From positions 248,001 through 312,000 of the IMG/VR virus record IMGVR_UViG_3300036781_000418: DNA of 64,000 nucleotides; one strand, 5' to 3'. Of this stretch, positions 3,946-55,337 are shown in pieces; position 1 is the stretch's first letter; each line of letters opens with the position of its first letter. Below the pieces are notes generated by a model. That model made no database searches, had not been told where the DNA came from, and was given only the letters and a program-made list of their open reading frames with translations. The position numbers and the translations under genes were made by a program.

Positions 3946-4032
3946 ATAGAGCAGCCTAGGTCCCACACGTCAAAAGCACGTCACGACCTAGGTGTTACTA
4001 TTTTGCATTCAACTTTCACTTTTGGAGAACCC

Positions 4033-4863
4033 ATGATCAAATCTATCCACACCCTCAAGAACCTCCTCGTGTCCCGCACGATTGAAGTCCGAACCAAGGC
4101 TCGCGTCGCCAAGATCGCCGCCATTCAAGTCGAGCTCCCTCACCTGCTCATCGACATCTCCTCCGCCAAAGCCTCTCCGTACGACACGTCTAAGGTTGCC
4201 GCCGACATGCTCGAGCTGGCCCTTGACCTGCTGCTGACGAACACGGCCTACGACCTCGATGTGATGGTGTCCAACCTTACGACCAAGCTGTCCGCCACGC
4301 TACCGAACATCGTGCCCAACGCGGCCGCGGCCGCCGTCGACATCAAGGATATCCTGAAATCTAGCGGTGCCGGTGCCACGGCCAAGGCCAAGCTTATCGC
4401 GGACCTTGCGCAGAAGAAGATCGACGCCGCAATGACCGCCTGGCCGTTCGCCAAGCCCACCGTACCAGCTGACACGGTGGACACAACTCGGGCCGCGAAG
4501 AACGCCATGAAGGACGCCATCTTCAACGGCCTTCGGACCAACAGCTCCACCCCGGTTGCACCAACGCTGTCGACGGTGAAGGGCGTACCACCGCGCAAGG
4601 TGAACGGCAAGCCGGCCGTTTGGGCCAACGTCCGCAAAGGCGCTGGTATCACGACTGGCAAGCGTCGCATTACAGGAATGGCAACTGACTACAGTGGCTT
4701 CACGCAGGTGGGCATCGGCAAGGACGCCGCGTGCGGCTGGAAGGTGAAGACCGGCGTGACGGAAGCTCCGTTCCTGACCTTCATCATCGGTAGCGAGAAC
4801 GGCGTCAAGGTCTCCTTCGACGAAGCACTCACCTACTGGAACCTCTCGCTCAACGCGAAGTAA
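4033..4863 (+). CDS. Hypothetical protein
   Basis: GGAG RBS before ATG 4033, long ORF. Confidence 0.75.
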   Translation: MIKSIHTLKNLLVSRTIEVRTKARVAKIAAIQVELPHLLIDISSAKASPYDTSKVAADMLELALDLLLTNTAYDLDVMVSNLTTKLSATLPNIVPNAAAAAVDIKDILKSSGAGATAKAKLIADLAQKKIDAAMTAWPFAKPTVPADTVDTTRAAKNAMKDAIFNGLRTNSSTPVAPTLSTVKGVPPRKVNGKPAVWANVRKGAGITTGKRRITGMATDYSGFTQVGIGKDAACGWKVKTGVTEAPFLTFIIGSENGVKVSFDEALTYWNLSLNAK

Positions 4864-4916
4864 GCGTCTTTCGGCCGGGTTACGTAAATAGGGACTGACT
4901 AAGTCCCTATTTTGGT

Positions 4917-5129
4917 ATGCGCAAGACCACTGAACTCGACGAAGACATTACCTCCGGCATCTCACCTTCGAAGCCAGCTTACCCAACGGGGCGCTTTGAC
5001 CCTGAAGCCTGGCGGAACGGCAAGGGCCCTAAGAAGGACGACGCTGAGGAAGACAAGGGCAAGACCAAGAAGGTCTTGCCGAAGCGCCGCTCCTTTAGGG
5101 CCTACGTTGACGAGCAAAAGCGCTCGTAA
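4917..5129 (+). CDS. Small charged hypothetical protein
   Basis: ORF after TAAATA motif. Confidence 0.55.
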   Translation: MRKTTELDEDITSGISPSKPAYPTGRFDPEAWRNGKGPKKDDAEEDKGKTKKVLPKRRSFRAYVDEQKRS

Positions 5130-5243
5130 ATCTAGATCAACGCTAAATAGACTACGTGCTTCCCAGTCCTGAATAAGGTTAGCACACCTTCGATAGTTGA
5201 GCTACAATACACCTATCGACGCTGCAACAACATTGGCAATCAA

Positions 5244-5375
5244 ATGAACTTCACTCGCTCCATCAACAAACACAATCGATTCTGGCAACGCCAGGATACG
5301 ACCATGTTTGTGCGCGAGCAGAAGCATGAGATTGATAATAGCACCTCCCCAGGACGGAGGATCAGTACCGAGTAA
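5244..5375 (+). CDS. Putative leader peptide (43 aa) of tRNA array
   Basis: ATG 5244 to TAA 5373-5375; MNFTRSINKHNRFWQRQDTTMFVREQKHEIDNSTSPGRRISTE; overlaps antiterminator arm. Confidence 0.7.
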   Translation: MNFTRSINKHNRFWQRQDTTMFVREQKHEIDNSTSPGRRISTE

Positions 5376-5438
5376 GATACTCGAACTGTTCGAATCTAAA
5401 CCTGGGGAGCTATGAAAGTAGCTCCCCAGGTCCGTTTT
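5344..5438 (+). promoter_or_regulatory. Candidate attenuator (antiterminator/terminator)
   Basis: CTCCCCAGG 5345-5353 complements CCTGGGGAG 5401-5409; terminator stem 5401-5412/5419-5430 followed by TCCGTTTT. Confidence 0.65.
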
Positions 5439-5442
5439 AAGA

Positions 5443-5640
5443 CCGCCTTTGCTTCATTTGGCGGGATATAAATCAAAGACTGCTAAGAAACGACCGAGTA
5501 CTCTTCAGGTCGCCGAGCACGGAAAGGGAATGTTGGTAATGAGATCTTGCGTGTGCAAGATCTCATTCTTAGTCACACACGGTGTCGTGCCTAGTAGCAG
5601 GTCCTGCGTAGTAGGTTGTGAGTGTGACTAAGAATGAGAA
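5443..5640 (+). ncRNA. Structured non-coding region preceding first tRNA
   Basis: Perfect 13-bp and 18-bp stems sharing TCTCATT; additional short hairpins. Confidence 0.5.
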
Positions 5641-5641
5641 T

Positions 5642-5716
5642 GGGAGTATGGCGTAGTCGGAAACGTACTTGGCTCTTACCCATGTGTCCACGGTTCGAAT
5701 CCGTGTGCTCCCACCA
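5642..5716 (+). tRNA. tRNA-Lys(CTT)
   Basis: Cloverleaf, loop CTCTTAC, TTCGAAT, CCA end. Confidence 0.85.
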
Positions 5717-5724
5717 TCCAACAT

Positions 5725-5799
5725 GCCTCCGTCGTCTAGTGGCTAGGACATTGCACTTTCACTGCAAGAAAGACGGATCGAAACCGTTCGGAGGCACCA
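5725..5799 (+). tRNA. tRNA-Glu(TTC)
   Basis: TTGCA-CTTTCAC-TGCAA anticodon arm, CCA end. Confidence 0.9.
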
Positions 5800-5843
5800 A
5801 CACTAAGGACGATGAAAGTCGCCCTTCTAAGTAGAATGAGCGT

Positions 5844-6071
5844 ATGAAGCTTCCATCTACACACCAAATCGGCGACAACGTCAACTACACCCTCAAGCAA
5901 GAGGGACCTTGCCGCCTTATCGTACCAGCCATCGTACGACGTGTCATCTTTACTGAAAGCAAGGTGATTTACGACCTTACTACAAAAGATAACGTCGTTC
6001 AAGAAGTTGATTCAGTTTGGATCAGCTCAGCGGAGATGGAGCAAGACAGTTCCCCAGTAGCACAGTGGTAG
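5844..6071 (+). CDS. Small hypothetical protein within tRNA array
   Basis: ORF whose TAG lies in the D-loop of tRNA-Asn. Confidence 0.6.
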   Translation: MKLPSTHQIGDNVNYTLKQEGPCRLIVPAIVRRVIFTESKVIYDLTTKDNVVQEVDSVWISSAEMEQDSSPVAQW

Positions 6072-6126
6072 TTGCGCCTGACTGTTAATCAGGATGTCGG
6101 TGGTTCGAGCCCATCCTGGGGAGCCA
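6051..6126 (+). tRNA. tRNA-Asn(GTT)
   Basis: TCCCCAG/CTGGGGA acceptor, CTGTTAA loop, GCCA. Confidence 0.92.
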
Positions 6127-6137
6127 ACAAGATTTAT

Positions 6138-6213
6138 GGGTCCGTAGCTCAGTGGTAGAGCGTCTGCCTGAAGAGCAGAGCGTCGTCGGTTCGAATCCGA
6201 CCGTGACCCACCA
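6138..6213 (+). tRNA. tRNA-Phe(GAA)
   Basis: Canonical cloverleaf, CTGAAGA loop. Confidence 0.92.
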
Positions 6214-6214
6214 T

Positions 6215-6290
6215 GTGTCTCAAGCCAATCAGGTGATGGCGTCGGTCTGAAGAACCGAACAGTCCGGTTCAATTCCGGAGGGACACACCA
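6215..6290 (+). tRNA. tRNA-Phe(GAA), second copy
   Basis: TCGGT-CTGAAGA-ACCGA, CCA end. Confidence 0.85.
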
Positions 6291-6299
6291 ATCCAACAT

Positions 6300-6373
6300 G
6301 GAGCGTTGATATATGGGTATTATGCTTGACTGTCTATCAGGCCAAACGGGTTCGAGTCCCGTACGCTCCGCCA
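6300..6373 (+). tRNA. tRNA-Asp(GTC)
   Basis: CTTGA-CTGTCTA-TCAGG, GCCA. Confidence 0.88.
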
Positions 6374-6382
6374 ACTTACAAT

Positions 6383-6474
6383 TCCCTTGTACTCTAATGG
6401 TAAGAGACCTGGCTGTTAACCAGACGTAGTCCGTCTAGAACGGTATGGAGGTTCGAGTCCTTCCGAGGGAGCCA
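6383..6474 (+). tRNA. tRNA-Asn(GTT) with long variable arm (92 nt)
   Basis: CTGTTAA loop; extra CCGT-CTAGA-ACGG hairpin in variable region. Confidence 0.75.
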
Positions 6475-6478
6475 ACAT

Positions 6479-6553
6479 GGTGCTGAAGCTGAATGGTTAC
6501 GCAGCGGTCTCATAAGCCGTGTGTCGTGGGTTCGATTCCCACCTGCACCACCA
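6479..6553 (+). tRNA. tRNA-Met/Ile2(CAT), elongator type
   Basis: G1-C72, CTCATAA loop. Confidence 0.85.
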
Positions 6554-6664
6554 GCATTTTAGACGCGCAACATCCTTGAGAATAATGGGTTGCTCCACCA
6601 AGGTAGAGGCAGGGGTTGCATACAAAAGCGTTGAAGGAACGACCGATAGGCCTTCACCAACAGT

Positions 6665-6738
6665 TGGGGTGTAGTGTAATGGAAGCACAACAGGCTTTGA
6701 CCCTGTTAGCGTGGGATCGATACCCGCCGCCCCTGCCA
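6665..6738 (+). tRNA. tRNA-Gln(TTG)
   Basis: ACAGG-CTTTGAC-CCTGT, GCCA. Confidence 0.88.
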
Positions 6739-6767
6739 GATAAATATGAGGATCAACGAAAGCATCA

Positions 6768-7226
6768 ATGAACCTCACAAAACTTACCCAACTCAATGAG
6801 TCGACTGACGCTGACCTACTTTCCAAGCTGGACAATGTGTGTAAGCTCTCCATTCAGATGGAGTTGAAGCCGATTAAGTTCGCCAAGAACACCTCCAATG
6901 AGGACAAAGCCGAGGCCACAAAGCTCGCCATTGATCACTACAAGTCACGACTGGACAACTTTTGGTTTGATTCCAGGGCGCTTACGTCAGGCGTAAACGG
7001 CATCAAGGCCTACATGGAAGAATGCTCAAAGCATGGATTTAAGTACGACGCTGCGGCTTGTGAAAAGTTGATCGGAGAGATGACGCATGCGAAGTTAGTT
7101 GGCGACCTTGCTTCAACCATCACCACGCACATTGCCCTTGCCGCCCAAGGCCGTACGAACCGCACTTGGGATTCAGATCAGCAAACTGCGGCGATCCTTC
7201 TGATGAAGGTCGTCGGTATCAAATAA
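6768..7226 (+). CDS. Late protein with internal-protein-like N-terminus; paralog of 9915..10358
   Basis: TAAATA 6741; MNLTKLTQLNE. Confidence 0.75.
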   Translation: MNLTKLTQLNESTDADLLSKLDNVCKLSIQMELKPIKFAKNTSNEDKAEATKLAIDHYKSRLDNFWFDSRALTSGVNGIKAYMEECSKHGFKYDAAACEKLIGEMTHAKLVGDLASTITTHIALAAQGRTNRTWDSDQQTAAILLMKVVGIK

Positions 7227-7231
7227 ACAAA

Positions 7232-7302
7232 CTCACCGCCAAAGGAATGGTCCGAACGCTACGAACGTTTGGCAGGAGGTTCGAGTCCTCTCGGTGGGTC
7301 CA
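7232..7302 (+). tRNA. Atypical tRNA-Arg(ACG), shortened D region
   Basis: CTCACCG/CGGTGGG acceptor, CTACGAA loop, intact T arm, TCCA end. Confidence 0.7.
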
Positions 7303-7310
7303 CCAACAAT

Positions 7311-7385
7311 GGCGTTCGTAGTGTAATGGTAGCACCAGAGACTGTGAATCTTTTAGTGCGGGTTCGAACCCCGTCGATCGCCCCA
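7311..7385 (+). tRNA. tRNA-His(GTG)
   Basis: Encoded G-1:C73 pair, CTGTGAA loop. Confidence 0.9.
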
Positions 7386-7391
7386 ATTAAC

Positions 7392-7465
7392 GCGTTCGTG
7401 GTGTAATGACTGCATAACCGGCCGAAAGCTGGCAGGGCCTGGGTAGAGACCAGGCGAACGCACCA
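7392..7465 (+). pseudogene. Degenerate tRNA-like gene
   Basis: Perfect acceptor and T stems, ACCA end; T loop GTAGAGA; anticodon loop lacks U33. Confidence 0.6.
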
Positions 7466-7537
7466 AAATTGACAACCGCTTTGGTTGACGGTTATCTCAT
7501 TTCCAGAATCCCCCGTCACCTGTTCTTTGTTGTCTAT

Positions 7538-7612
7538 GGCTGCCTAGCTCAGTGGTAGAGCAATGTCTTGATAAGGCATAGGTCGTTGGTCCGATTCCAA
7601 CGGTAGCCACCA
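7538..7612 (+). tRNA. tRNA-Ile(GAT)
   Basis: ATGTC-TTGATAA-GGCAT, ACCA. Confidence 0.88.
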
Positions 7613-7616
7613 AATT

Positions 7617-7690
7617 GCCTCTGTAATTCAATGGCAGAATACCGTGCTGATAACGCGGCTACGCAGGTTCGATTCCTGACGGAGGCACCA
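7617..7690 (+). tRNA. tRNA-Ile(GAT), second copy
   Basis: CCGTG-CTGATAA-CGCGG, ACCA. Confidence 0.88.
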
Positions 7691-7722
7691 GCTAAATAGT
7701 CATGTACTCAATGGAGATCTAC

Positions 7723-7971
7723 ATGGCTGATACGACCACAACCCCTGCAACTGACCTTTCCACCGCGGTTGACTCCGCCGCCGTTCAGGCGATCGTGGAC
7801 AAGAAGTTCTGGCAGTCGAAGACTTTTTGGGCCAACGTCATTCTCGCTGGAGCGATCCTCTTGCAGATGAAGACAGGCTTCTTGATCAGCCCAGACCTAC
7901 AAGGTCTCGCGATCACTGGTATCAACCTCGTGCTGCGTAAGTTCACGAGCGGAGCCGTCACGCTCTGGTAA
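7723..7971 (+). CDS. Small membrane protein, holin-like
   Basis: KKFWQSKTFWANV motif plus 2 hydrophobic segments; TAAATA 7693. Confidence 0.6.
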   Translation: MADTTTTPATDLSTAVDSAAVQAIVDKKFWQSKTFWANVILAGAILLQMKTGFLISPDLQGLAITGINLVLRKFTSGAVTLW

Positions 7972-7979
7972 CAAACTGA

Positions 7980-8053
7980 TGGGACGTGGTGTAGTGGTAA
8001 CATGTGGGGATCTGACCCCCTCGCCCTAGGTTCGATTCCTAGCGTCCTTGCCA
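7980..8053 (+). tRNA. tRNA-Gln(CTG)
   Basis: ATCTGAC loop, TTCGATT, GCCA. Confidence 0.8.
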
Positions 8054-8059
8054 AACAAT

Positions 8060-8124
8060 GGGACCAATTCGGTCACTTGATTTTCGTTCCTTAAGAACCG
8101 TAAGTCATCGTTATCGTCCCGCCA
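8060..8124 (+). pseudogene. tRNA remnant
   Basis: GGGAC/GTCCC-GCCA ends; no recognisable T loop. Confidence 0.4.
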
Positions 8125-8129
8125 ACAAT

Positions 8130-8202
8130 GGAGCCTAAGCCTGATTGGTGAGGGTGCAGTATGATTGCTGTTAAGATGGAGTTCGAATCTCTATGGGCTC
8201 CC
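8130..8202 (+). pseudogene. tRNA-like gene with contracted anticodon loop
   Basis: Acceptor, D and T arms intact; CAGTA-TGAT-TGCTG 4-nt loop; no CCA. Confidence 0.55.
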
Positions 8203-8213
8203 CTAATCTGAAA

Positions 8214-8669
8214 GTGACTCTTGAGCCGGCTGGTAAGCGTGGCTTGAAGTTTCTGATCTACGCGGTAGTTAACGGACGTAAGCGTGAAGTTGGATACCTC
8301 AACTCCGCCGTCACTCGGAACATCACGAAGCATGAAGTACTCGCGGCTCACGATGACTACAAGCTCGTCAAGCGCATCTTCAAGCAGGTTCCGGACGAGT
8401 ACACGTTCAACTACTACTGGCTGCAGAAGCTCTTCGTCTACGAGGAGTACAGTGGTCTTGGTATTGGTTCAGCGGCCCTGCAAGTTTGGTTTACCAAGCT
8501 GCGATCGATCGCGATGGTGGCCTTGGAAGCCTATCCAATTGGGTACCGAACGAAGGTGGAGCTTGAACGGTTCTACCTCAAGAACAACTTCGTCGTGTTT
8601 CATCGACTGCGTCCAGCAGGAGAGCGACAACGGCGAGCAACGATGGCCATGACGTTCGTCAAGGCCTAA
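8214..8669 (+). CDS. GNAT-family acetyltransferase-like protein (start uncertain)
   Basis: LFVYEEYSGLGIGSAAL motif A; FYLKNNF motif B. Confidence 0.7.
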   Translation: MTLEPAGKRGLKFLIYAVVNGRKREVGYLNSAVTRNITKHEVLAAHDDYKLVKRIFKQVPDEYTFNYYWLQKLFVYEEYSGLGIGSAALQVWFTKLRSIAMVALEAYPIGYRTKVELERFYLKNNFVVFHRLRPAGERQRRATMAMTFVKA

Positions 8670-8676
8670 CGAATAT

Positions 8677-8752
8677 GGGTGATTGGTGTAGTTGGCAGCA
8701 TAGCGGTCTCCAAAACCGTTGGTCATGGGTTCGAGTCCCTGGTCGCCCGCCA
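8677..8752 (+). tRNA. tRNA-Trp(CCA)
   Basis: GCGGT-CTCCAAA-ACCGT, GCCA. Confidence 0.92.
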
Positions 8753-8809
8753 TATAGCTTTGAGTAAGCTTGCTAAATAGGAAGCAACAATTCCATTTAG
8801 GAGTCTCTC

Positions 8810-9046
8810 ATGGCACTTCGCAACGTAACGGGCCCAGCCCTGCACAGCTTCACGACTGACGAGCTTACCGCGATCGTCGGCAACTACGGCCCATCGGGCA
8901 CCATTGACGACGGCGCAATCGCTCCTGGTGCAATGGTTTGGAACACGGATGAGTCCGCAGTTTGGGTCTTTGACGGCACGACGTTCAGCGCCGTAGCCGC
9001 CGCTCCAGCTCCAGCTCCTTCGCCTGCACCGGCTCCATCGCCGTAA
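8810..9046 (+). CDS. Small late protein with (AP)n tail, fibre-module-like
   Basis: TAAATA 8774; GAMVWNTDESAVWVFDGTTF resembles fibre N-terminal repeat. Confidence 0.65.
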   Translation: MALRNVTGPALHSFTTDELTAIVGNYGPSGTIDDGAIAPGAMVWNTDESAVWVFDGTTFSAVAAAPAPAPSPAPAPSP

Positions 9047-9070
9047 TTCAGTCGTAGGCTGAAAACAAAG

Positions 9071-9100
9071 AAGGGGAACCGAGTGATCGGTTCCCCTTAC
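9071..9100 (+). terminator. Hairpin terminator
   Basis: AAGGGGAACCGA-GTGA-TCGGTTCCCCTT. Confidence 0.75.
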
Positions 9101-9104
9101 TTAC

Positions 9105-9378
9105 TTCGCGGTGACCCTTGGTGGTACCCTACTTTCTGGAGCAGCCAGGAAAGCGGAAAGGTCGGCTGAGGTTCCACACAACTGAAAGGAATCGTTTACC
9201 GGTGACCAAAGTTCCGGCAAAACACGACACCTCAGCTGGCCGTGTTCCTATTTGCTTCTCTAAGCAAGTACATTTTACGCAGCGACGTCTTCGGATAACA
9301 CTGCACATTTCAGGTTTAAGAAAGGATGCATCATGATGATCAGCTCGACGCTTGATGCGTCTGGTAAACACACCTCCT
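9105..9378 (+). ncRNA. Unidentified multi-stem RNA (about 270 nt)
   Basis: 13-bp stem 9160-9172/9229-9241 enclosing a junction; 10-bp stem 9324-9333/9353-9362; further hairpins; no convincing gene. Confidence 0.55.
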
Positions 9379-9381
9379 AAT

Positions 9382-9455
9382 GGGGGTGTAGCTCAAGGGT
9401 AGAGCAGGTGGCTTTTAACCACCCGGCGAGGGTTCGATCCCCTCCACCCCTACCA
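9382..9455 (+). tRNA. tRNA-Lys(TTT)
   Basis: GGTGG-CTTTTAA-CCACC, ACCA. Confidence 0.92.
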
Positions 9456-9489
9456 AATCACGTAAATAGCTGACCATATTGGAGTCCCC

Positions 9490-9918
9490 ATGAAGCTCAG
9501 CACCATTTCCGAACTCATCGCCATCAACGAAGCGGCGCTTAAGATCAGCGATACCGGTTGGTACGTAATCGATCCGACCGTGCACGACGGCGATAACCCG
9601 CACTACAAGAAGGCCGCTGGCCCGTACAGGACGCGTGAAGAGGCGAAGGAGTACGCCACTGGCAAGGACCAAGTTAAGTTCGGTCACATGGTCAACAACG
9701 GCTTCATTGAGGTCGATGAACATGGCACCTCGAACGAAGGCTACGTCGCCGTTTCACAGGCGCTGGTCTACGTGAAGAAGGCGATTGGCGCCCTTGCTGA
9801 AAGCGAGAACGAAGTGAAGGAGCACCTTGAGATGCTTGGCTTTGACATCTCCTTCGACAACCTGCTTCAACAGCTGAACGACCTTGAGGAACACCTTAAG
9901 GACGCGTCGACAAAATGA
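9490..9918 (+). CDS. Late protein with internal-protein-like N-terminus
   Basis: TAAATA 9463; MKLSTISELIAINE. Confidence 0.75.
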   Translation: MKLSTISELIAINEAALKISDTGWYVIDPTVHDGDNPHYKKAAGPYRTREEAKEYATGKDQVKFGHMVNNGFIEVDEHGTSNEGYVAVSQALVYVKKAIGALAESENEVKEHLEMLGFDISFDNLLQQLNDLEEHLKDASTK

Positions 9919-10358
9919 AACTGATTCAGCTGAATGAAAACCTTGACGAGGCGAAAATTGACGCCTTCATCAAGGCCTACAACGGCATTGAAGCGCCACT
10001 CGCTAAGAAGCTCAAGCCGAAAGGATCGCCTGAGATGATCAAGGCGGCCTTTGACCTTGCATTTGATCATCATCAACGAGATGAAGTTCTGGACTTTGAT
10101 GACGCGGCGATGACACGTGGCATCAAGGGCATCGAAGCCGCCCTCAACGCGGCCAAGGAGTACAAGACGTCAATTGACGTCGCCGCTTGCACCAAGGCCT
10201 CCATGGAGCTGAGTCAGCTCCGAAACTTTGGCAAGCTGGCCACTGACGTCGGCAACGCCATGTTCGTCGCTTTGCAGGGACTGAACAACGAACATTGGTC
10301 TAAGGATGATCAAGCCCAAGCCCTACTCGCCTGTAAGTCGGTAGGCATCAGTAAATAA
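9915..10358 (+). CDS. Late protein, paralog of 6768..7226
   Basis: MKLIQLNE; colinear similarity. Confidence 0.75.
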   Translation: MKLIQLNENLDEAKIDAFIKAYNGIEAPLAKKLKPKGSPEMIKAAFDLAFDHHQRDEVLDFDDAAMTRGIKGIEAALNAAKEYKTSIDVAACTKASMELSQLRNFGKLATDVGNAMFVALQGLNNEHWSKDDQAQALLACKSVGISK

Positions 10359-10359
10359 T

Positions 10360-10435
10360 GCATCGTTGACCTGAGAGGTTAAGGACCCTCCTTACAAGTG
10401 GGAATATGCTGGTTCGAGTCCAGCACGATGCACCA
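10360..10435 (+). tRNA. tRNA-Val(TAC)
   Basis: CTTACAA loop, ACCA. Confidence 0.88.
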
Positions 10436-10442
10436 TATAATA

Positions 10443-10518
10443 GCTCTGGAAGTGTTACAAGGTGGCATGACAGTTTCGTAATCTGTAGGACGCGGTTCGA
10501 GGCCGCGCCGGAGCACCA
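10443..10518 (+). tRNA. tRNA-Thr(CGT)
   Basis: TTCGTAA loop, ACCA. Confidence 0.85.
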
Positions 10519-10579
10519 AAATTCCCGGGAGGACGCGCAAGCGTCCTCCTATTTTCGCATCAACAACTGGAGAAAATCC

Positions 10580-10966
10580 ATGAACGCCGACTTCCATTCT
10601 CGCTTTATCACCAACACGGACGACACAGGCCGTTTCATCGTGAGCTCACAGCGGACGGGTATTCGGTACTACGTGGAACCGGTCGTGACGGAGCACACCC
10701 CTGAGTGGGGCTCCATCGATCCAGCCACCGGCAACCTTACCCACAAGAAGGGTGACGGCAAGTACCGTGGCGGTGTCTCACCGTCTGAGTCCATCGTGAA
10801 CGAGGATGCGGTCAAGGTTGGTGTCTTCGCGAAGGTGCACGACCTTGGACGAGGCGTGTCACCACACCAGGCGATTGACTACCTCGACGCACAGTACCCA
10901 ACCGTCAACCCAGCGTATGAGCTCACCGCTGAGTTTATCGGCTCCATCGTCAACCCAGCCTACTAA
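10580..10966 (+). CDS. Hypothetical phage protein
   Basis: GGAG RBS; ORF. Confidence 0.75.
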   Translation: MNADFHSRFITNTDDTGRFIVSSQRTGIRYYVEPVVTEHTPEWGSIDPATGNLTHKKGDGKYRGGVSPSESIVNEDAVKVGVFAKVHDLGRGVSPHQAIDYLDAQYPTVNPAYELTAEFIGSIVNPAY

Positions 10967-10974
10967 GGATTATC

Positions 10975-11196
10975 ATGGCTACCCTCAAGGACCTCGTTGG
11001 TCCGGACAAGACCGTCCACTTTCAATTCTATCGTAAGGGTGCGCTCTACTATCGCACGTCAGACAACTTTGAATTCTTGGTGCCGATTGAGGACTGTGGT
11101 GACGCGGAATTTTTGGCAATGGACAAGGCTATGATGTTCATGCGGTACATTCGCAAACAGCTAGCCGTCAACGCTGAAGGCAGGGAGGCTGTATGA
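10975..11196 (+). CDS. Hypothetical phage protein
   Basis: AGGA RBS; ORF. Confidence 0.7.
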   Translation: MATLKDLVGPDKTVHFQFYRKGALYYRTSDNFEFLVPIEDCGDAEFLAMDKAMMFMRYIRKQLAVNAEGREAV

Positions 11197-11372
11197 ACGC
11201 CAAGAAGCTGGAAAAGAAGAAGCTCAAGCTCGCCGAGCGGATCAAGCAGCTGGAGGATGGGCTCGTCCTCTCCCTCCAGAAGAAGTCCTCCTCAGCAACC
11301 GAGATCGACATGCCTGGCACGATGCGCCAGATCCGAGAGCTGAAGGAAGAGCTGGACGAGCTAAATAGCTAA
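11193..11372 (+). CDS. Small coiled-coil protein
   Basis: ATGA overlap, 59 aa. Confidence 0.6.
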   Translation: MNAKKLEKKKLKLAERIKQLEDGLVLSLQKKSSSATEIDMPGTMRQIRELKEELDELNS

Positions 11373-11384
11373 CCAACAATTTAC

Positions 11385-11459
11385 GCTGTCATAGTGCTAG
11401 TGGAAACACACGTCTTTGGTAAGGACGGATCGAAGGTTCGATTCCTTCTGGCAGCACCA
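11385..11459 (+). tRNA. tRNA-Thr(GGT)
   Basis: CGTCT-TTGGTAA-GGACG, ACCA. Confidence 0.9.
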
Positions 11460-11463
11460 CTCT

Positions 11464-11799
11464 ATGTTCGTCACCATCCATGAACTGCTGAACGCAATCC
11501 AAGTGAACGAGTCTCGCTACTCGGACATGGTGGAGCAATGGTGCTCAACGAACCTTGAGTCCTTTAAGACCGCCACGGACGCCTACCTTGCGCTTCGCAA
11601 GTACGTGGACGAGACGAGCGTCTTGAAGAACTACCTCACGGCCACCTTTAAGGGCAGTGAGGTCCGAATTCAGAGGTACCTCATCGACATCCTTTCACAG
11701 ATGGCCAAGGAGAAGAACCTCAGCGGCTACGGTGAGGTTGACCTAACACAGGCCAACTACAACCACAGCGCGTCAGGAAGCGCGTCAGCTTCCATGTAA
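11464..11799 (+). CDS. Hypothetical protein
   Basis: ATG 5 nt after tRNA-Thr; MFVTIHELLNAIQVNE. Confidence 0.6.
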   Translation: MFVTIHELLNAIQVNESRYSDMVEQWCSTNLESFKTATDAYLALRKYVDETSVLKNYLTATFKGSEVRIQRYLIDILSQMAKEKNLSGYGEVDLTQANYNHSASGSASASM

Positions 11800-11806
11800 G
11801 GTCAAT

Positions 11807-11887
11807 TGACAGGTGGTGTAATCCGGATGGCAACACACTTGGGCCCAACTTAAGGAGATGCTGGTTCGACCCCAGCCCTGTCAGCCA
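11807..11887 (+). tRNA. Atypical tRNA-Trp(CCA)-like
   Basis: TGACAGG/CCTGTCA acceptor, 13-nt D loop, GCCCAAC anticodon loop. Confidence 0.6.
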
Positions 11888-11888
11888 A

Positions 11889-11996
11889 ATGCAACTACTC
11901 ATCCTCATTATCCTGGCGCCGCTCTGGTTGCCGATCGCGATCATTGGAGCCCCACTGTGGCTCCTCCTCATGGTAATCCTTTCATGGAAGCGCTGA
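11889..11996 (+). CDS. 35-aa hydrophobic peptide
   Basis: MQLLILIILAPLWLPIAIIGAPLWLLLMVILSWKR. Confidence 0.45.
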   Translation: MQLLILIILAPLWLPIAIIGAPLWLLLMVILSWKR

Positions 11997-12379
11997 ACCA
12001 CAAGCAGGTTATCGTCCTGCGTAAGGACCTCAACATGCGTAAGGGCAAGCTGGTTGCACAGGGCGCGCACGCCTCAATGGCGGCGATCCTTAGCCAGGGC
12101 CAGGCCACCGACGTTGGTGACACCTTCACCATTCAGCTGGACGATCGCATGAAGGACTGGCTCCTAGGCTCCTTCAAGAAGATCACAGTCTCAGTAAACT
12201 CGGAGGAGGAGCTGCTGTCCCTGTACGAGCGAGCTAAAGGTTCAGGTCTGATCTGCTCACTGATCCTTGACTCTGGCCTGACCGAATTTGGTGGTCGCCC
12301 CACCTACACCGCGGTCGCCGTCGGTCCGGACGTAGCTGCGAAGGTCGACGTGCTCACCGGTGACCTTCCGCTGCTGTAG
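11984..12379 (+). CDS. pth2: Peptidyl-tRNA hydrolase, Pth2 type
   Basis: KQVIVLRKDLNMRKGKLVAQGAHAS; DSGLTEF; TAVAVGP. Confidence 0.92.
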   Translation: MEALNHKQVIVLRKDLNMRKGKLVAQGAHASMAAILSQGQATDVGDTFTIQLDDRMKDWLLGSFKKITVSVNSEEELLSLYERAKGSGLICSLILDSGLTEFGGRPTYTAVAVGPDVAAKVDVLTGDLPLL

Positions 12380-12461
12380 GCGTAGCACCTTACACCGTCG
12401 CCGAACGGTGTGCACTCGGTCAACCTCTACTCACGGTCCAACACCAACGTCCCGCTAACTT

Positions 12462-12500
12462 AAAATGGCAGCAACGCTTCGGCTTGCTGCCATTTTTGTT
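12462..12500. terminator. Bidirectional-type intrinsic terminator
   Basis: AAAATGGCAGCAA/TTGCTGCCATTTT. Confidence 0.8.
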
Positions 12501-12514
12501 TTCTTGAGACCATA

Positions 12515-12679
12515 ATGGACCGCTCAAAATCTTACTACCGACTTAAACTGCGTCGAGATGAACTGTGGTGGCGTAACTCCGAGCCTCTGAACCTGCAGTG
12601 CGCCAATGATCGACTCTGGAGAAAGTTGAAGCTCAAGCCATTTTTCTTCGACTACAACGAGAAGACTGGGCCAGCATGA
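12515..12679 (+). CDS. Small hypothetical protein
   Basis: 54-aa ORF with GAG RBS. Confidence 0.45.
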   Translation: MDRSKSYYRLKLRRDELWWRNSEPLNLQCANDRLWRKLKLKPFFFDYNEKTGPA

Positions 12680-12780
12680 GCATCGCATAACATTGAAGCT
12701 TTAAGTCCGTCTCAGGTTCAGCAGGATCCGTGCAGATGCGCGTGTTATGATGTTCTGATCGGACATAACCCGGACCAGAT

Positions 12781-13299
12781 ATGATCACCAACGAACAACA
12801 GGCAATCCGGCAGTGGTTGTCAAAACCCGCTCCGTACAGCGGCGGTTGCGGCTGTGTTGGTCCACAACGGATGAAGTATCCCGGACCTGTGTACGGAGTT
12901 GGAGGCCCCGTCCATGACGAGTACACTCTCAAGGTACTCGTGCCCAAGAGCCTCACCCGTGCCCAAGCCATCCGCGCCACCCTGCGCTGCAAACAAGCTA
13001 TGGCCCTCAGCATGGAGGAAGCTAAGCAGCTGATGTCGCACGAACCGATATCTCGAAAATCCGAGTATCCGTTGTTCAGCCACACCGACCTTAACGCCAT
13101 GAAGGAGCTAGGTGTCGAGGTCGCCGAAGGACGGGCCGTTGATCCAAACTATGGCTACAAGCCCGTGTGTCCGTGTGCCATGGCGTACGTTGAGGAGGTC
13201 AACGGCTTCTTCTACATGATCATTGAACATCGTAGCCCAGATGGCATCACGCACACGGCCAAGAACCTTGGTCCAGTTGGCGGGCCCTACTACAAATGA
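12781..13299 (+). CDS. Hypothetical protein (GCGCVGP...CPCAM)
   Basis: ORF; Cys motif. Confidence 0.7.
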   Translation: MITNEQQAIRQWLSKPAPYSGGCGCVGPQRMKYPGPVYGVGGPVHDEYTLKVLVPKSLTRAQAIRATLRCKQAMALSMEEAKQLMSHEPISRKSEYPLFSHTDLNAMKELGVEVAEGRAVDPNYGYKPVCPCAMAYVEEVNGFFYMIIEHRSPDGITHTAKNLGPVGGPYYK

Positions 13300-14117: not shown

Positions 14118-14411
14118 ATGCCGCACTTCACCACCTTGATCTTTGGCACGGGCAACGTTGAAGCGAACCGAGAACTTGATCGGCTTCGGGCACTGGATTG
14201 CTGGGTGTCGGGTGAAGTGCAGCCGACCAGCAATCGCCCACATGTGCATGTAGGCGTGTCGGCACAGGTGGAGCTGCCAGCCCATGGCTACTTCGTTGAT
14301 GCCACCTTAACCTACCACGAGTTGGAGCTACGCGCCCAGGTCTTTCCAAATGGACAGATCATGAGCGTGCTGGTTCCAGTTGGTGCGACTGTATGCGGAT
14401 ATGGATCCTAA
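14118..14411 (+). CDS. Hypothetical protein
   Basis: ORF in operon. Confidence 0.6.
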   Translation: MPHFTTLIFGTGNVEANRELDRLRALDCWVSGEVQPTSNRPHVHVGVSAQVELPAHGYFVDATLTYHELELRAQVFPNGQIMSVLVPVGATVCGYGS

Positions 14412-15459
14412 GCTGCTAACGCGTGACGACTTCCGAGAGGGGGTCTTTAAACGCGACAACTACAAGTGCATCTTCTGCGGTAAATCCGCAGCTGAAACGC
14501 CTGAGGGCAAGCTCGACGCCCACCACATCCTTGAGCGTCGGCTTTGGCCGGACGGCGGTTATTATCTGGAGAACGGCGCGACCGTCTGTGAGGAGCACCA
14601 CCTTGAATGCGAACGAACTATCAAGAGCGTGGAGGAAGTTAGAGCTCAATGCGGTGTATCCAAGATCTGGGTGCCACCGCACCTATACCCCGATCATCTC
14701 TATGACAAGTGGGGAAATCCAGTCCTTGATGACGGCCGTCGCGGCCGTGGGGAACTCTATCACGATGAGTCTGTTCAAAAGGCTCTCGGAGCTGGAGGCG
14801 TCCTCGACCTCTTCACGTGGTATGTCAAGTACGAGCGGACGTTCCATCTCCCATGGAGTCCAGGACTCCATGACGACGACAAGGCCTTAAAGGACTGCTC
14901 ACAGTTCGAGGGTCAGCGCGTTATCGTGTCCTACAAAGCGGACGGCGAGAACACGACGGGTTACCATGACGGTCATATTCACGCACGGTCGATCGACTCC
15001 CGTGGTGGTGAGGACCGAGCATGGGTGAAGAAGTTCCTGATTGAACAGGTGTGCTTCAACCTACCTGAAGGCTGGCGGATCTGCGGTGAAAACCTGTGGG
15101 CCGAGCACTCCATCCACTACGACGACCTGAAGTCGTACTTTTACGGGTTTAGTATCTGGAACGAGCGCAACACGTGCTTGTCCTGGGACGAAACGGTGGA
15201 GTGGTTCGAGCTGCTTAGCGTGACTCCGGTCGACGTCCTGTATGACGGTGTATGGGACGAAGCGCTGATCCGGAAAATGGCCTCGCAGGTTGACACGGTA
15301 AAACACGAAGGTCTTGTGATAAGATTGGCTCGGAGCTTCACGTACGGTGACTTCCGGAAAAGTGTCGCGAAGTACGTCCGTGAAGGGCATGTGCAGACCA
15401 CCAAGCACTGGCGTACGGGACGCGCGTTTGTTCCCAACGAACTGGAGCGAAAGCCATGA
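14401..15459 (+). CDS. HNH domain fused to ATP-dependent RNA ligase
   Basis: RDNYKCIFCG...DAHHI...NGATVCEEHH; KADGENTT motif I; HEGLVIR; KYVR. Confidence 0.85.
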   Translation: MDPKLLTRDDFREGVFKRDNYKCIFCGKSAAETPEGKLDAHHILERRLWPDGGYYLENGATVCEEHHLECERTIKSVEEVRAQCGVSKIWVPPHLYPDHLYDKWGNPVLDDGRRGRGELYHDESVQKALGAGGVLDLFTWYVKYERTFHLPWSPGLHDDDKALKDCSQFEGQRVIVSYKADGENTTGYHDGHIHARSIDSRGGEDRAWVKKFLIEQVCFNLPEGWRICGENLWAEHSIHYDDLKSYFYGFSIWNERNTCLSWDETVEWFELLSVTPVDVLYDGVWDEALIRKMASQVDTVKHEGLVIRLARSFTYGDFRKSVAKYVREGHVQTTKHWRTGRAFVPNELERKP

Positions 15460-45446: not shown

Positions 45447-45640
45447 CTGTGAACCCCTGTTCGTCGGATCCAGCCTCAAAGCCGACTATCTGCAAGTAAG
45501 AAGACTTGAACGTGTCTCAGGTAGCTGGGATGTGATTTAGCTGCATATCACTAAAAAGTAGCAGGCCTAACGGGATGCCTATTACTCCGTTGTTCGGTCG
45601 TACCATCGTGTGACCGTCCCTTGCGATGTCGTTTTTCGCT
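45447..45640 (+). ncRNA. Candidate Y RNA(s) upstream of Ro60
   Basis: Multi-hairpin non-coding region directly 5' of TROVE gene. Confidence 0.5.
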
Positions 45641-45690
45641 CAACCACGTTTCCTTTTCTCTCGTTGAAACCCTTTGTTTTGGAGAACCAG

Positions 45691-53889: not shown

Positions 53890-53973
53890 CCGTGCGTCGG
53901 TTGTAAGTAAGGTAAGGAGGGTGGCCGTGGTGGGCTACCCTCCATTACCCCTCCCCTTGAAAGGCGACCCATC

Positions 53974-55335: not shown

Positions 55336-55337
55336 CC

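What the first reader, a model, noticed from the sequence alone, without database searches (positions are those of the whole stretch)
5244..5438. Candidate tRNA-depletion-sensing attenuator heading the phage tRNA array
Seen in sequence: a 43-codon leader ORF. Its first 32 codons use only M,N,F,T,R,I,K,H,W,Q,D,V,E plus one Ser. These are exactly the 13 amino acids served by the 20 downstream tRNAs, all 13 occur, and L,A,G,P,C,Y (no tRNAs for these in the window) are absent. Synonymous pairs are both sampled (AAC/AAT, TTC/TTT, AAA/AAG, CAC/CAT, CAA/CAG, ATC/ATT, ACT/ACG/ACC). Codons 34-37 contain CTCCCCAGG (5345-5353), a perfect complement of the 5' arm (5401-5409) of a 12-bp terminator hairpin, and a local CCTCC/GGAGG hairpin competes for the same segment. 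Established: amino-acid operon attenuators (trp, his) use this ribosome-stall logic. Inference: stalling on any codon whose host tRNA is cleaved or depleted frees the antiterminator and switches on the replacement tRNA array, making it a multi-codon tRNA-damage sensor.
Basis: partly seen in the sequence, partly recalled or inferred. Interest (0 to 1): 0.92.

Follow-up and report, generated by a model that had tools for sequence, protein, structure and literature searches.

The report
Leader-peptide attenuator heading phage tRNA array
A 43-codon mini-gene and a switchable terminator hairpin, conserved in about 25 uncultured giant phages and always directly upstream of their tRNA gene cluster, look like a translation-sensing switch for phage tRNA production; no such control of phage tRNA genes turned up in the literature I searched.

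Summary
The sequence features are real. The ORF is at 5244-5375. CTCCCCAGG (5345-5353) complements the 5' arm of a 14-bp GAAA-loop hairpin (5400-5431). A local CCTCC/GGAGG hairpin competes.

The tRNA count is overstated. I find 18 tRNAs plus one aberrant tRNA-like sequence, serving 12 amino acids. There is no tRNA-Arg, yet 4 of the first 32 codons are Arg.

Comparative data strengthen the attenuator reading. About 25 distinct homologous leaders exist, all in uncultured phage contigs. Each of the 19 with DNA in hand lies just upstream of a tRNA array.
- The hairpin stem covaries.
- CCCCAGG...GGAG is invariant but read in two different frames, and the ORF stays open through it in both.
- All length changes between two invariant RNA landmarks inside the ORF are multiples of three.
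- Stop codon and hairpin keep fixed spacing.
- Without the 3' arm, the antiterminator is the predicted fold in all 15 tested.

Codons before the antiterminator strand are enriched for those read by array tRNAs. Leu, Tyr, Gly and Pro are purged, but Ala and Ser are not. Repertoire tracking is weak.

Verdict: a probable ribosome-mediated transcription attenuator for a tRNA operon, a new variant of a known kind. The tRNA-supply-sensing logic and its sign remain inference.

The parts
5142..5149 (+). GCTAAATA motif, a phage promoter-like element upstream of the leader
   Evidence: It occurs 7 times in the window against 0.25 expected. All copies are co-oriented with the nearby gene or tRNA annotations. 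CGCTAAATA is conserved upstream of the leader in L003, L007, L093, L128, L129 and L137.
5179..5208 (+). Sigma-70-like promoter TTAGCA-18-TACAAT; the predicted transcript start is near 5215
   Evidence: Found by the consensus scan. A -10 hexamer (TACAAT, TATAAT, TATAGT or TAAGAT, often with TGn) followed by a conserved ATCGAC is present in the relatives.
5244..5375 (+). Leader ORF: 43 codons plus TAA, with a weak Shine-Dalgarno-like purine patch upstream
   Evidence: Searches give about 25 distinct homologous peptides of 41-50 aa. The ATG is conserved although the N-terminal sequence is not. Indels between RNA landmarks are all multiples of 3. No Pfam or PHROG family matches.
5276..5301 (+). 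Hairpin 1 inside the ORF (codons 11-20), followed by a T-rich stretch; a candidate pause hairpin
   Evidence: AATCGATTCTGGCA is invariant in 14 of 15 aligned copies. Fold energies are -10 to -15 kcal/mol in all 19. L129 carries a compensatory C-G to U-A change, and the window clade keeps the stem with a different loop.
5345..5353 (+). Antiterminator strand A (CTCCCCAGG), inside codons 34-37
   Evidence: The CCCCAGG core is invariant in 19 of 19. It is read as TCC CCA GGA in the window clade and CCC CAG G in the others. It forms 8-10 bp with the 5' arm in all 15 tested. L136 is compensated; L134, L135 and L139 extend the pairing on the other side.
5356..5360 (+). GGAGG: the local partner of CCTCC (5344-5348), and Shine-Dalgarno-like
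   Evidence: GGAG lies 1-2 nt after strand A in 14 of 15 copies and is conserved in both reading frames. The local hairpin is -4 to -8 kcal/mol.
5373..5375 (+). Leader stop codon at a conserved distance from strand A and from the hairpin
   Evidence: Distance from the end of A to the stop is 17-26 nt. Distance from the stop to the hairpin is 22-27 nt, across 19 leaders. The intervening sequence is poorly conserved.
5400..5441 (+). Terminator-like hairpin (14 bp, GAAA loop, 5400-5431) plus tail CCGTTTTAAG
   Evidence: Fold. Stem covariation: AU<->UA in 3 sequences, GC<->AU in 6, UA<->UG/AU. It is called a terminator in L131 and L134. In L134 the lower stem is replaced by a T-run, giving a canonical terminator.
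5442..5640 (+). Conserved structured RNA between the hairpin and the first tRNA. It is adjacent to the attenuator; whether it belongs to the attenuator is unknown.
   Evidence: It is about 88% identical to L003 although the flanking protein is 49% identical. 8 of 17 predicted pairs show compensatory changes. No Rfam match.
5642..11459 (+). The tRNA array (18 tRNAs, interspersed small ORFs), the presumed regulated genes. The first is tRNA-Lys(CUU) at 5642-5716.

Best explanation
The region is a ribosome-mediated (leader-peptide) transcription attenuator placed between a promoter and the phage's tRNA gene array.

Proposed sequence of events:
1. RNA polymerase starts near 5215 and transcribes a 43-codon ORF. 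This ORF contains a conserved hairpin (5276-5301, a likely pause site) and, near its end, strand A (5345-5353).
2. Strand A can pair with the 5' arm of the downstream hairpin (5400-5431). That prevents the terminator from forming.
3. Naked RNA would form A:B first and read through.
4. A ribosome that keeps pace with the polymerase covers A, or is held next to it by the GGAGG motif at the stop codon, when the 5' arm emerges. The terminator then forms and transcription stops before the tRNAs.
5. A ribosome delayed earlier in the ORF leaves A free, and the array is transcribed.

The codons before A are almost all ones read by tRNAs of the array, so the delay would report a shortage of those tRNAs. 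The shortage could come from the host pool being too small for the phage's demand or from host tRNAs being damaged. Either way the result is negative feedback on tRNA supply.

Shown by sequence comparison: the ORF, the alternative pairings, their conservation, and the codon bias.
Inferred: that termination and translation actually occur, the sign of the switch, and what causes stalling.
For: 1. Family and context. 13 homologous small proteins came from a profile search, 6 more from the representative library, and further copies from DNA patterns. All 19 leaders with DNA sit 370-980 nt upstream of the first tRNA of an array. No true copy turned up in the bacterial-genome scan, and cultured phages showed no BLAST-detectable match.
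2. Constraint. The leader DNA is about 83-88% identical to L003 while the neighbouring protein is 49% identical.
3. Translation. The ATG is conserved although codons 2-10 are not. The distance between the invariant AATCGATT and CCCCAGG takes the values 72, 75, 78, 81, 84, 87 in one clade and 73, 76, 79 in the other. The untranslated spacer takes every value from 22 to 27.
4. RNA switch. CCCCAGG..GGAG is invariant in two different frames. A:B is 8-10 bp (-17 to -23 kcal/mol) and is the predicted fold in 15 of 15 when the 3' arm is absent. The terminator (-24 to -29 kcal/mol) wins once it is present. L136 shows the same change on A, the 5' arm and the 3' arm. L134 keeps AGCCTGG in the 5' arm, where it now pairs only with A.
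5. Geometry is conserved.
6. Codon bias. Served fraction before A is 26/32 (window), 35/37, 31/32, 31/32, 28/30 and 29/32 in relatives, against 0.55-0.67 in their proteomes. The bias also exceeds dinucleotide shuffles. Among 89 variant amino-acid states there are 2 Gly/Leu/Pro/Tyr against 21.6 expected, with no depletion after A. 80-100% of array anticodon species are represented.
7. Context. RNA ligase, PTH2 and release-factor-like genes lie next to these arrays.
Against: - There are no transcript or ribosome data, so everything is in silico.
- The window's U-tract is weak.
- The terminator is more stable than A:B, so the switch must be kinetic.
- The stop codon lies 17-26 nt after A. A terminating ribosome therefore only borders A, which leaves the sign open.
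- No covariation supports an upstream partner for A. The 1:2-like pairing is between invariant bases.
- There are no tandem runs of regulatory codons as in the classical leaders.
- Ala and Ser, unserved by any array, occur at the neutral rate (13 against 13.0 expected).
- The window and L128 lack tRNA-Arg but have Arg codons.
- L129 has 9 tRNAs for 8 amino acids behind a normal leader.
- GCTAAATA promoter-like motifs inside the array mean part of the array could be transcribed independently.
- Most conserved residues of the peptide are explained by RNA structure, so the peptide alignment overstates coding conservation.
Confidence: 0.55

Rival explanations
1. Same attenuator, opposite sign. Completed translation is required for readthrough. 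A ribosome parked at the stop codon covers GGAGG, the local partner of A. A is then freed to pair with the 5' arm, and the array is transcribed only when the leader can be translated. A stalled or absent ribosome leaves A in the local hairpin and the terminator forms.
For: The stop codon is always at least 17 nt after A, so A emerges from a terminating ribosome while GGAG, 1-2 nt after A, is covered. GGAG is conserved in both frames. The local hairpin is predicted in all 15.
Against: The local hairpin is weak (-4 to -8 kcal/mol) and exposes CCAGG in its loop as a toehold. In 15 of 15, the naked RNA lacking the 3' arm is predicted to form A:B anyway. A:B would have to close a 42-51-nt loop around a ribosome. 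Positive feedback on tRNA supply makes less regulatory sense, and the characterised ribosome-mediated attenuators that I recall work by stall-induced readthrough (established knowledge).
Confidence: 0.15
2. An RNA-only leader. The conserved hairpins are a processing, stability or protein- or tRNA-binding element of the tRNA precursor, or a separate small RNA ending at the hairpin. The ORF is incidental.
For: Conservation is mostly at nucleotide level, including synonymous sites: AAT CGA in 15 of 15, TTC in 14 of 15, CAA in 13 of 15, and CCCCAGG in two frames. A second covarying structured RNA follows directly. Overall fold z-score is -6.5.
Against: The ATG is conserved over a divergent N-terminus. 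At least seven length changes between RNA landmarks are all multiples of 3, whereas the spacer is aperiodic. The ORF is kept open through A in both frames and always ends 17-26 nt later. The amino-acid-level purge of Leu, Gly, Pro and Tyr is not explained by dinucleotide content. No Rfam family, T-box or known leader matches.
Confidence: 0.1
3. An ordinary small phage protein gene with its own terminator. The tRNAs are transcribed from other promoters, and position next to the array is just conserved gene order.
For: Gene callers predicted it in many contigs. GCTAAATA promoter-like motifs occur within the array. A TATA-rich block follows the hairpin.
Against: The peptide sequence is not conserved where the RNA is unconstrained. 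The conserved residues map onto RNA helices. This reading gives no reason for a copy of the terminator's 3' arm inside the ORF, kept in two frames. No promoter was called between the hairpin and the first tRNA in the three loci where that interval was scanned: the window, L131 and L134. One promoter-like site in L131 lies at the tRNA itself.
Confidence: 0.08
4. A nascent-peptide arrest leader. The invariant NRFWQ...P acts in the ribosome tunnel, like TnaC or SecM. It stalls the ribosome in response to a small molecule or factor rather than to tRNA supply.
For: N11, R12, F13, W14, Q15, E29 and P36 are invariant across the 15 aligned peptides. Aromatic and Pro residues are typical of arrest peptides (established knowledge).
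Against: The same codons are invariant at synonymous positions and form hairpin 1 and strand A. RNA constraint therefore suffices. The Pro arises from CCCC in either frame.
Confidence: 0.05

Closest known systems
Leader-peptide transcription attenuators of amino-acid operons (trp, his, phe, thr, leu, ilv) and of the pheST synthetase operon in Enterobacteria
   Same: Promoter-proximal short ORF, an intrinsic terminator before the regulated genes, an alternative antiterminator helix sharing one strand with the terminator, a hairpin within the ORF that could serve as a pause site, and leader codons related to the product of the operon. pheST shows that translation-apparatus genes can be controlled this way (established knowledge).
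   Different: The regulated genes are tRNAs, not enzymes, and the element is in a phage. The leader has no tandem run of one codon but samples about 15 anticodon species once or twice each. The antiterminator strand lies inside the ORF, 17-26 nt before the stop, rather than after it. No supported 1:2 pairing exists, so the untranslated state is predicted to be ON, not OFF. No sequence similarity: the Rfam library, which I recall includes the classical amino-acid leader families, gave no match.
Antibiotic-responsive ribosome-mediated attenuators (bmrCD/bmrB, vmlR, mef/mel; see PMC4335068 for mef/mel)
   Same: Three-element logic, in which any ribosome stall in a short leader ORF favours an antiterminator over a terminator. 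No amino-acid-specific codon run is needed.
   Different: Those respond to drug-stalled ribosomes and control resistance genes in Gram-positive bacteria. Here the codon content points to tRNA supply and the target is a tRNA array.
T-box riboswitches
   Same: A leader that adjusts transcription readthrough to the state of a tRNA pool through a terminator/antiterminator choice.
   Different: T-boxes bind uncharged tRNA directly without translation. They have Stem I, a specifier loop and the T-box sequence. None is detected here, and this leader shows signatures of translation.
Phage tRNA arrays as supply or counter-defence (PMC10264068, PMC11464382, PMC11555353)
   Same: A large tRNA cluster, with tRNA-Lys first in most of these arrays and an RNA ligase nearby. 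This is the biological setting in which a tRNA shortage would matter.
   Different: By title and abstract, those papers concern what phage tRNAs do. My three literature searches found none that describes regulated expression of the array by an attenuator.

Membership tests
Ribosome-mediated (leader-peptide) transcription attenuator | Short translatable ORF between the promoter and the regulated genes | tested here: met
   The ORF is 5244-5375. The ATG is conserved and a weak GAG/AGG patch lies 7-12 nt upstream in relatives. Indels inside the ORF have 3-nt periodicity. The promoter is at 5179-5208. Translation itself has not been observed.
Ribosome-mediated (leader-peptide) transcription attenuator | Intrinsic terminator between the leader ORF and the regulated genes | tested here: inconclusive
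   The hairpin is GC-rich, 14 bp, and has covarying pairs. It is called a terminator in L131 and L134. In the window the tail is CCGTTTTAAG and falls below the scan threshold. Termination was not measured.
Ribosome-mediated (leader-peptide) transcription attenuator | Antiterminator helix mutually exclusive with the terminator | tested here: met
   A:B is 8-10 bp in 15 of 15 and is the minimum-energy fold without the 3' arm. The core is invariant, and flanking pairs are compensated in L136 and shifted in L134, L135 and L139.
Ribosome-mediated (leader-peptide) transcription attenuator | Regulatory codons cognate to the operon's product, placed so that a stalled ribosome frees the antiterminator | tested here: inconclusive
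   Array-served codons are enriched before A and not after it, and 80-100% of anticodon species are covered. Against this: no tandem runs, Ala and Ser are tolerated, Arg is unserved in the window, and L129 is discordant.
Ribosome-mediated (leader-peptide) transcription attenuator | Pause hairpin that couples transcription to translation | tested here: inconclusive
   Hairpin 1 (5276-5301) is conserved at -10 to -15 kcal/mol. It has one compensatory change and is followed by a T-rich segment. Pausing cannot be tested here.
Ribosome-mediated (leader-peptide) transcription attenuator | Readthrough responds to ribosome stalling | not testable with these tools
   This needs reporter, in-vitro transcription-translation or Term-seq data.
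T-box riboswitch | Stem I with specifier loop, and the conserved T-box sequence in the antiterminator bulge | tested here: not met
   Rfam 15 scan of 4000-13000 at E <= 1 found only tRNA and chance hits. There were none at gathering threshold in the window or in 7 related loci.
Known amino-acid operon leader families (which I recall Rfam holds for Trp, His, Thr and Leu) | Sequence and structure similarity to a curated leader model | tested here: not met
   The scan of all 4227 Rfam families gave no leader-type match.

The most novel reading that the evidence does not exclude
Giant phages regulate their own tRNA arrays with a multi-codon 'tRNA gauge'. It is a leader ORF built almost only from codons read by the array's tRNAs. 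Shortage or cleavage of any of about 15 tRNA species slows the leading ribosome, frees an antiterminator, and switches on the replacement tRNAs. Supply then restores termination. This would be the first attenuator known to control tRNA genes, and the first that integrates many tRNA species rather than one amino acid.
Probability: 0.35. Interest if true: 0.92.

Novelty: new variant of a known kind. Interest (0 to 1): 0.8.

Why it matters
How phages time and dose the expression of their tRNA genes is essentially unknown. Recent work shows that these tRNAs can decide the outcome of infection against tRNA-cleaving defences (abstracts of PMC10264068, PMC11464382 and PMC11555353, listed).

A conserved translation-sensing switch at the head of the array would give a direct, testable mechanism for demand-controlled tRNA supply. 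It would extend leader-peptide attenuation from amino-acid metabolism to the tRNA pool itself. It would also provide a compact natural sensor of decoding capacity that could be used as a reporter of tRNA depletion.

The family is also a clean comparative case. One RNA element is kept in two reading frames while the ORF through it is preserved.

Tried and rejected
- Cultured phages. DNA similarity (blastn) and tblastn with the flanking protein and with two leader peptides all gave no match. The nearest isolates by RNA ligase are Ralstonia phage RsoM2USA and Caulobacter jumbo phages. The RsoM2USA region fetched has no tRNAs and was not informative.
- Metagenome hairpin pattern. Of 120 stretches, only L093 was a true relative. 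The rest are unrelated palindromes.
- Genome scan. The four MAG hits are chance matches inside ordinary genes, with no hairpin and no array. This gives no host clue.
- Known families. Rfam, Pfam and PHROGs have none for the leader RNA or peptide.
- A trp-like 1:2 pairing (UCUGG with CCAGG) was proposed by RNAalifold. I do not rely on it. It is 5 bp, both sides are invariant, and the 5' side is already used in the stronger local hairpin 1.
- Cys tracking. The Cys codon occurs only in leaders whose arrays have tRNA-Cys. I first took this as tracking. In most leaders, however, UGC is the 3' half of hairpin 1. Only L144/L147 place a Cys codon elsewhere. This amounts to one or two evolutionary events.
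- Nucleotide composition as the full explanation of the codon bias was rejected. Dinucleotide shuffles and the other two frames give lower served fractions.
- 'Only served codons allowed' was rejected as stated, because Ala and Ser are at neutral frequency.
- I did not use the count of structure pairs, which needs a long typed structure string. Pair counts were computed in scripts instead.
Full report
**What is there.** The window is part of a 342.6-kb uncultured phage contig, IMGVR_UViG_3300036781_000418.
- The ORF at 5244-5375 has 43 codons plus TAA, as described.
- CTCCCCAGG (5345-5353) is the exact complement of 5401-5409, the 5' arm of a hairpin.
- RNAfold draws that hairpin as 14 bp with a GAAA loop at 5400-5431. 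The fold of 5214-5440 is -81.8 kcal/mol, z = -6.5.
- If the 3' arm is omitted, the minimum-energy structure contains the 9-bp helix between the two.
- CCTCC (5344-5348) and GGAGG (5356-5360) form a -7.3 kcal/mol local hairpin.
- A sigma-70-like promoter, TTAGCA-18-TACAAT, lies at 5179-5208.
- The tail after the hairpin, CCGTTTTAAG, is too weak for the consensus scan to call a terminator.

**The tRNA count is overstated.** ARAGORN finds 17 tRNAs. Rfam adds tRNA-Met (CAT) at 6479-6550 and a weak aberrant tRNA-like sequence at 11807-11884.
- The array therefore has 18 good tRNAs, 15 anticodon species and 12 amino acids.
- There is no tRNA-Arg anywhere in the 64 kb, although four of the first 32 leader codons are Arg.
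- The statement 'exactly the 13 served amino acids' is therefore wrong for this window.
- The bias is still real. 26 of 32 codons before the antiterminator strand are read by array tRNAs, against 55% of codons in the phage's long ORFs (P = 1.7e-3), and against a mean of 17.7 in stop-free dinucleotide shuffles (P = 2e-4).
- All 15 anticodon species are represented in the leader. P = 0.002 against the proteome null, but 0.15 once the enrichment is conditioned on.

**Relatives.**
- The flanking 276-aa protein has one relative at 49% identity. Its contigs (L002-L004, one sequence) carry the leader at about 83-88% DNA identity from the promoter to the first tRNA. This is far more conserved than the neighbouring coding sequence.
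- The hairpin pattern found L007 in the viral collection and L093 in metagenomes.
- A profile of four leader peptides recovered 13 small predicted proteins of 42-50 aa.
- The representative library added six more.
- A second DNA pattern added L142-L147, two of them from 331-kb and 336-kb contigs.
- In total there are about 25 distinct leaders.
- Each of the 19 for which I hold DNA lies directly upstream of a tRNA array. The array begins with tRNA-Lys(CUU) in most.
- BLAST searches of the cultured-phage collection found nothing. Four pattern hits in bacterial MAGs are chance matches.
- By RNA ligase similarity the phage belongs near Ralstonia phage RsoM2USA and the Caulobacter jumbo phages. This suggests a high-GC proteobacterial host (inference).

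**Evidence that the ORF is translated.**
- Codons 2-10 differ widely between leaders, yet an in-frame ATG is always present 24-33 nt before the invariant AATCGATT.
- The distance from AATCGATT to CCCCAGG, two landmarks conserved at RNA level, takes the values 72, 75, 78, 81, 84 and 87 nt in one clade and 73, 76 and 79 nt in the window's clade. That is at least seven length changes, all multiples of three.
- The untranslated spacer between the stop codon and the hairpin takes every value from 22 to 27.
- A short purine patch (GAG, AGG or AAGGA) lies 7-12 nt before the ATG in the relatives. The window has only GG.

**Evidence that the RNA switch is under selection.**
- CCCCAGG followed by GGAG is invariant. 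It is read as TCC CCA GGA CGG AGG in the window clade and as CCC CAG GCT GGA GG in the others. In both frames the ORF runs through it and stops 17-26 nt later. The conservation is therefore at nucleotide level, and separately there is selection for an ORF crossing it.
- The hairpin stem covaries: AU/UA in 3 sequences, GC/AU in 6, UA/UG/AU.
- In L134 the lower stem is replaced by a T-run, giving a textbook terminator. The scan calls it and the L131 hairpin terminators.
- The A:5'-arm helix is 8-10 bp in all 15 aligned copies.
  - L136 changed the arm (G to A), the 3' arm (C to T) and strand A (C to T) together.
  - L131, L134 and L135 changed T-A to G.T.
  - L134, L135 and L139 gained pairs on the other side.
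  - L138 and L140 each carry one uncompensated mismatch.
- In 15 of 15 the transcript lacking the 3' arm is predicted to form A:B (duplex -17 to -23 kcal/mol). The complete transcript forms the terminator (-24 to -29 kcal/mol). The exception is L134, where A:B wins.

**Other conserved anatomy.**
- Hairpin 1 (5276-5301 in the window) covers codons 11-20. It rests on the invariant AATCGATTCTGGCA and folds at -10 to -15 kcal/mol in all 19.
- It has a compensatory C-G to U-A change in L129. It keeps its stem with a different loop in the window clade and in L144.
- A T-rich stretch follows it. By analogy with classical attenuators I read it as a pause hairpin (inference).
- It also explains why the peptide motif NRFWQ(E)CQRF looks conserved: the codons are invariant at synonymous sites too.

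**The codon content across the family.**
- In relatives with large arrays, the served fraction before strand A is 35/37, 31/32, 31/32, 28/30 and 29/32, against 0.59-0.67 in their own genes. It also exceeds dinucleotide shuffles.
- After strand A there is no enrichment.
- Over 19 distinct leaders, the 623 residues before strand A include no Leu, no Tyr, one Gly and three Pro. The Gly and Pro are all in the codon touching the RNA element.
- Among 89 variant amino-acid states, 2 are Gly/Leu/Pro/Tyr, against 21.6 expected from single-nucleotide neighbours of the observed codons. Leu alone is 0 against 7.8 expected.
- Leu is one mutation away from the Ile, Met, Phe and Val codons that vary freely here, so its absence points to selection on codon identity.

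**Points against a strict match between leader and tRNA set.**
- Ala and Ser, for which no array has a tRNA, occur at exactly the neutral rate (13 against 13.0 expected).
- The window and L128 lack tRNA-Arg but keep Arg codons, including the invariant CGA at codon 12.
- L129 has only nine tRNAs for eight amino acids behind an ordinary leader.
- The Cys codon is found only where the array has tRNA-Cys, but in most leaders UGC is simply the 3' half of hairpin 1. Only L144/L147 place it elsewhere.

**Mechanism.** The best reading is a ribosome-mediated attenuator.
- Naked RNA folds A:B as soon as the 5' arm emerges, and would read through.
- A ribosome that keeps pace with the polymerase masks A, and the terminator forms.
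- A ribosome delayed at any of the roughly 30 codons before A leaves A free.
- Because those codons are mostly ones decoded by the array's tRNAs, the switch would act as a gauge of their supply and give negative feedback.
- The steps from 'alternative helices exist' to 'ribosome position chooses between them' are inference. So is the cause of stalling, which could be low host supply for a lower-GC phage proteome or cleavage by anticodon nucleases.
- The sign is not settled. The stop codon lies at least 17 nt after A, so a terminating ribosome covers GGAGG and only borders A. This also permits a model in which completed translation frees A.
- I favour stall-induced readthrough for two reasons. 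The untranslated RNA is predicted to be antiterminated in all homologues. The characterised ribosome-mediated attenuators that I recall work that way (established knowledge).

**Comparison with known systems.**
- It works like the trp/his/phe/thr/leu/ilv and pheST leader-peptide attenuators, and in its three-element logic like the drug-responsive bmrCD and mef/mel attenuators.
- It differs in its target (tRNA genes), its host (phage) and its leader design (many codon types once or twice each, rather than a run of one).
- It also differs in placing the antiterminator strand inside the ORF, and in lacking a supported 1:2 helix.
- It is not a T-box and matches no Rfam leader.
- Three literature searches found no description of an attenuator or leader peptide controlling phage tRNA genes. 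The library is incomplete, so this is absence of evidence only.

**Verdict.** The structural observation is confirmed. The tRNA bookkeeping is partly wrong. The attenuator interpretation is substantially strengthened by comparative data. The 'tRNA-damage sensor' reading remains a plausible, untested inference. I rate it a new variant of a known kind, with high interest.

Noticed in passing
window 5442-5640: A conserved structured RNA of about 200 nt lies between the attenuator hairpin and the first tRNA. It has several covarying stems (8 of 17 predicted pairs have compensatory changes) and a conserved 12-nt loop, GAGUAGUCUUCA. A long stem, CAUUCUUAG/CUAAGAAUG, abuts tRNA-Lys. No Rfam family matches. 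L129 and L136 carry a second sequence type at the same place. Its function is unknown; it could be a processing platform, an antitermination RNA or a small RNA.
   Followed up: partly
window 614, 5142, 7691, 8772, 11360 (+ strand); 51382, 60347 (- strand): GCTAAATA occurs 7 times against 0.25 expected. Every copy is co-oriented with the nearby gene or tRNA annotations and lies close upstream of one. It is probably a phage-specific promoter motif (from memory, it resembles the T4 late TATAAATA). Three copies are inside the tRNA array, so parts of the array may be transcribed independently of the attenuator.
   Followed up: partly
window 6383-6474; also L093, L128, L131, L132, L134, L135, L139, L140, L144: A 92-nt tRNA with anticodon GUU (Asn) carries a long variable arm of the kind normally seen in Leu, Ser and Tyr tRNAs. 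It is conserved across the relatives at 87-95 nt. Relatives also carry 82-84-nt tRNAs with anticodon UUC. Their aminoacylation identity is unclear.
   Followed up: no
window 11807-11884; L128 14585-14663: An aberrant tRNA-like sequence scores 36.6 bits in Rfam and is called by ARAGORN only at a lowered threshold. It has an irregular anticodon loop (UUGGGCCCAAC) and a CCA end. It is conserved in the closest long relative and overlaps the start of ORF 11858-12379.
   Followed up: partly
window 14380-15459, 45610-47322, 51919-56813: The window carries an RNA ligase (PF09414) a few kb after the array and a Ro60/TROVE homologue with a vWA domain. It also carries a PrkA - DUF444 - SpoVR gene trio. 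The first two suggest RNA repair or RNA quality-control functions in this phage.
   Followed up: no
L128, L131, L132, L134 (loci of relatives): Peptidyl-tRNA hydrolase (PTH2), release-factor-like (PCRF/RF-1), NUDIX and RNA ligase genes are interspersed with or flank the tRNA arrays of relatives. Together they amount to a translation-maintenance gene neighbourhood.
   Followed up: no
L136 1022-1524; L134 6765-6900 and L146: L136 has two ORFs with weak T5orf172/MUG113 hits, possibly a homing endonuclease. They are inserted between the hairpin and the structured RNA. L134 and L146 have an insert of about 130 nt at the same place, and their hairpin has become a short canonical terminator with a T-run.
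   Followed up: no
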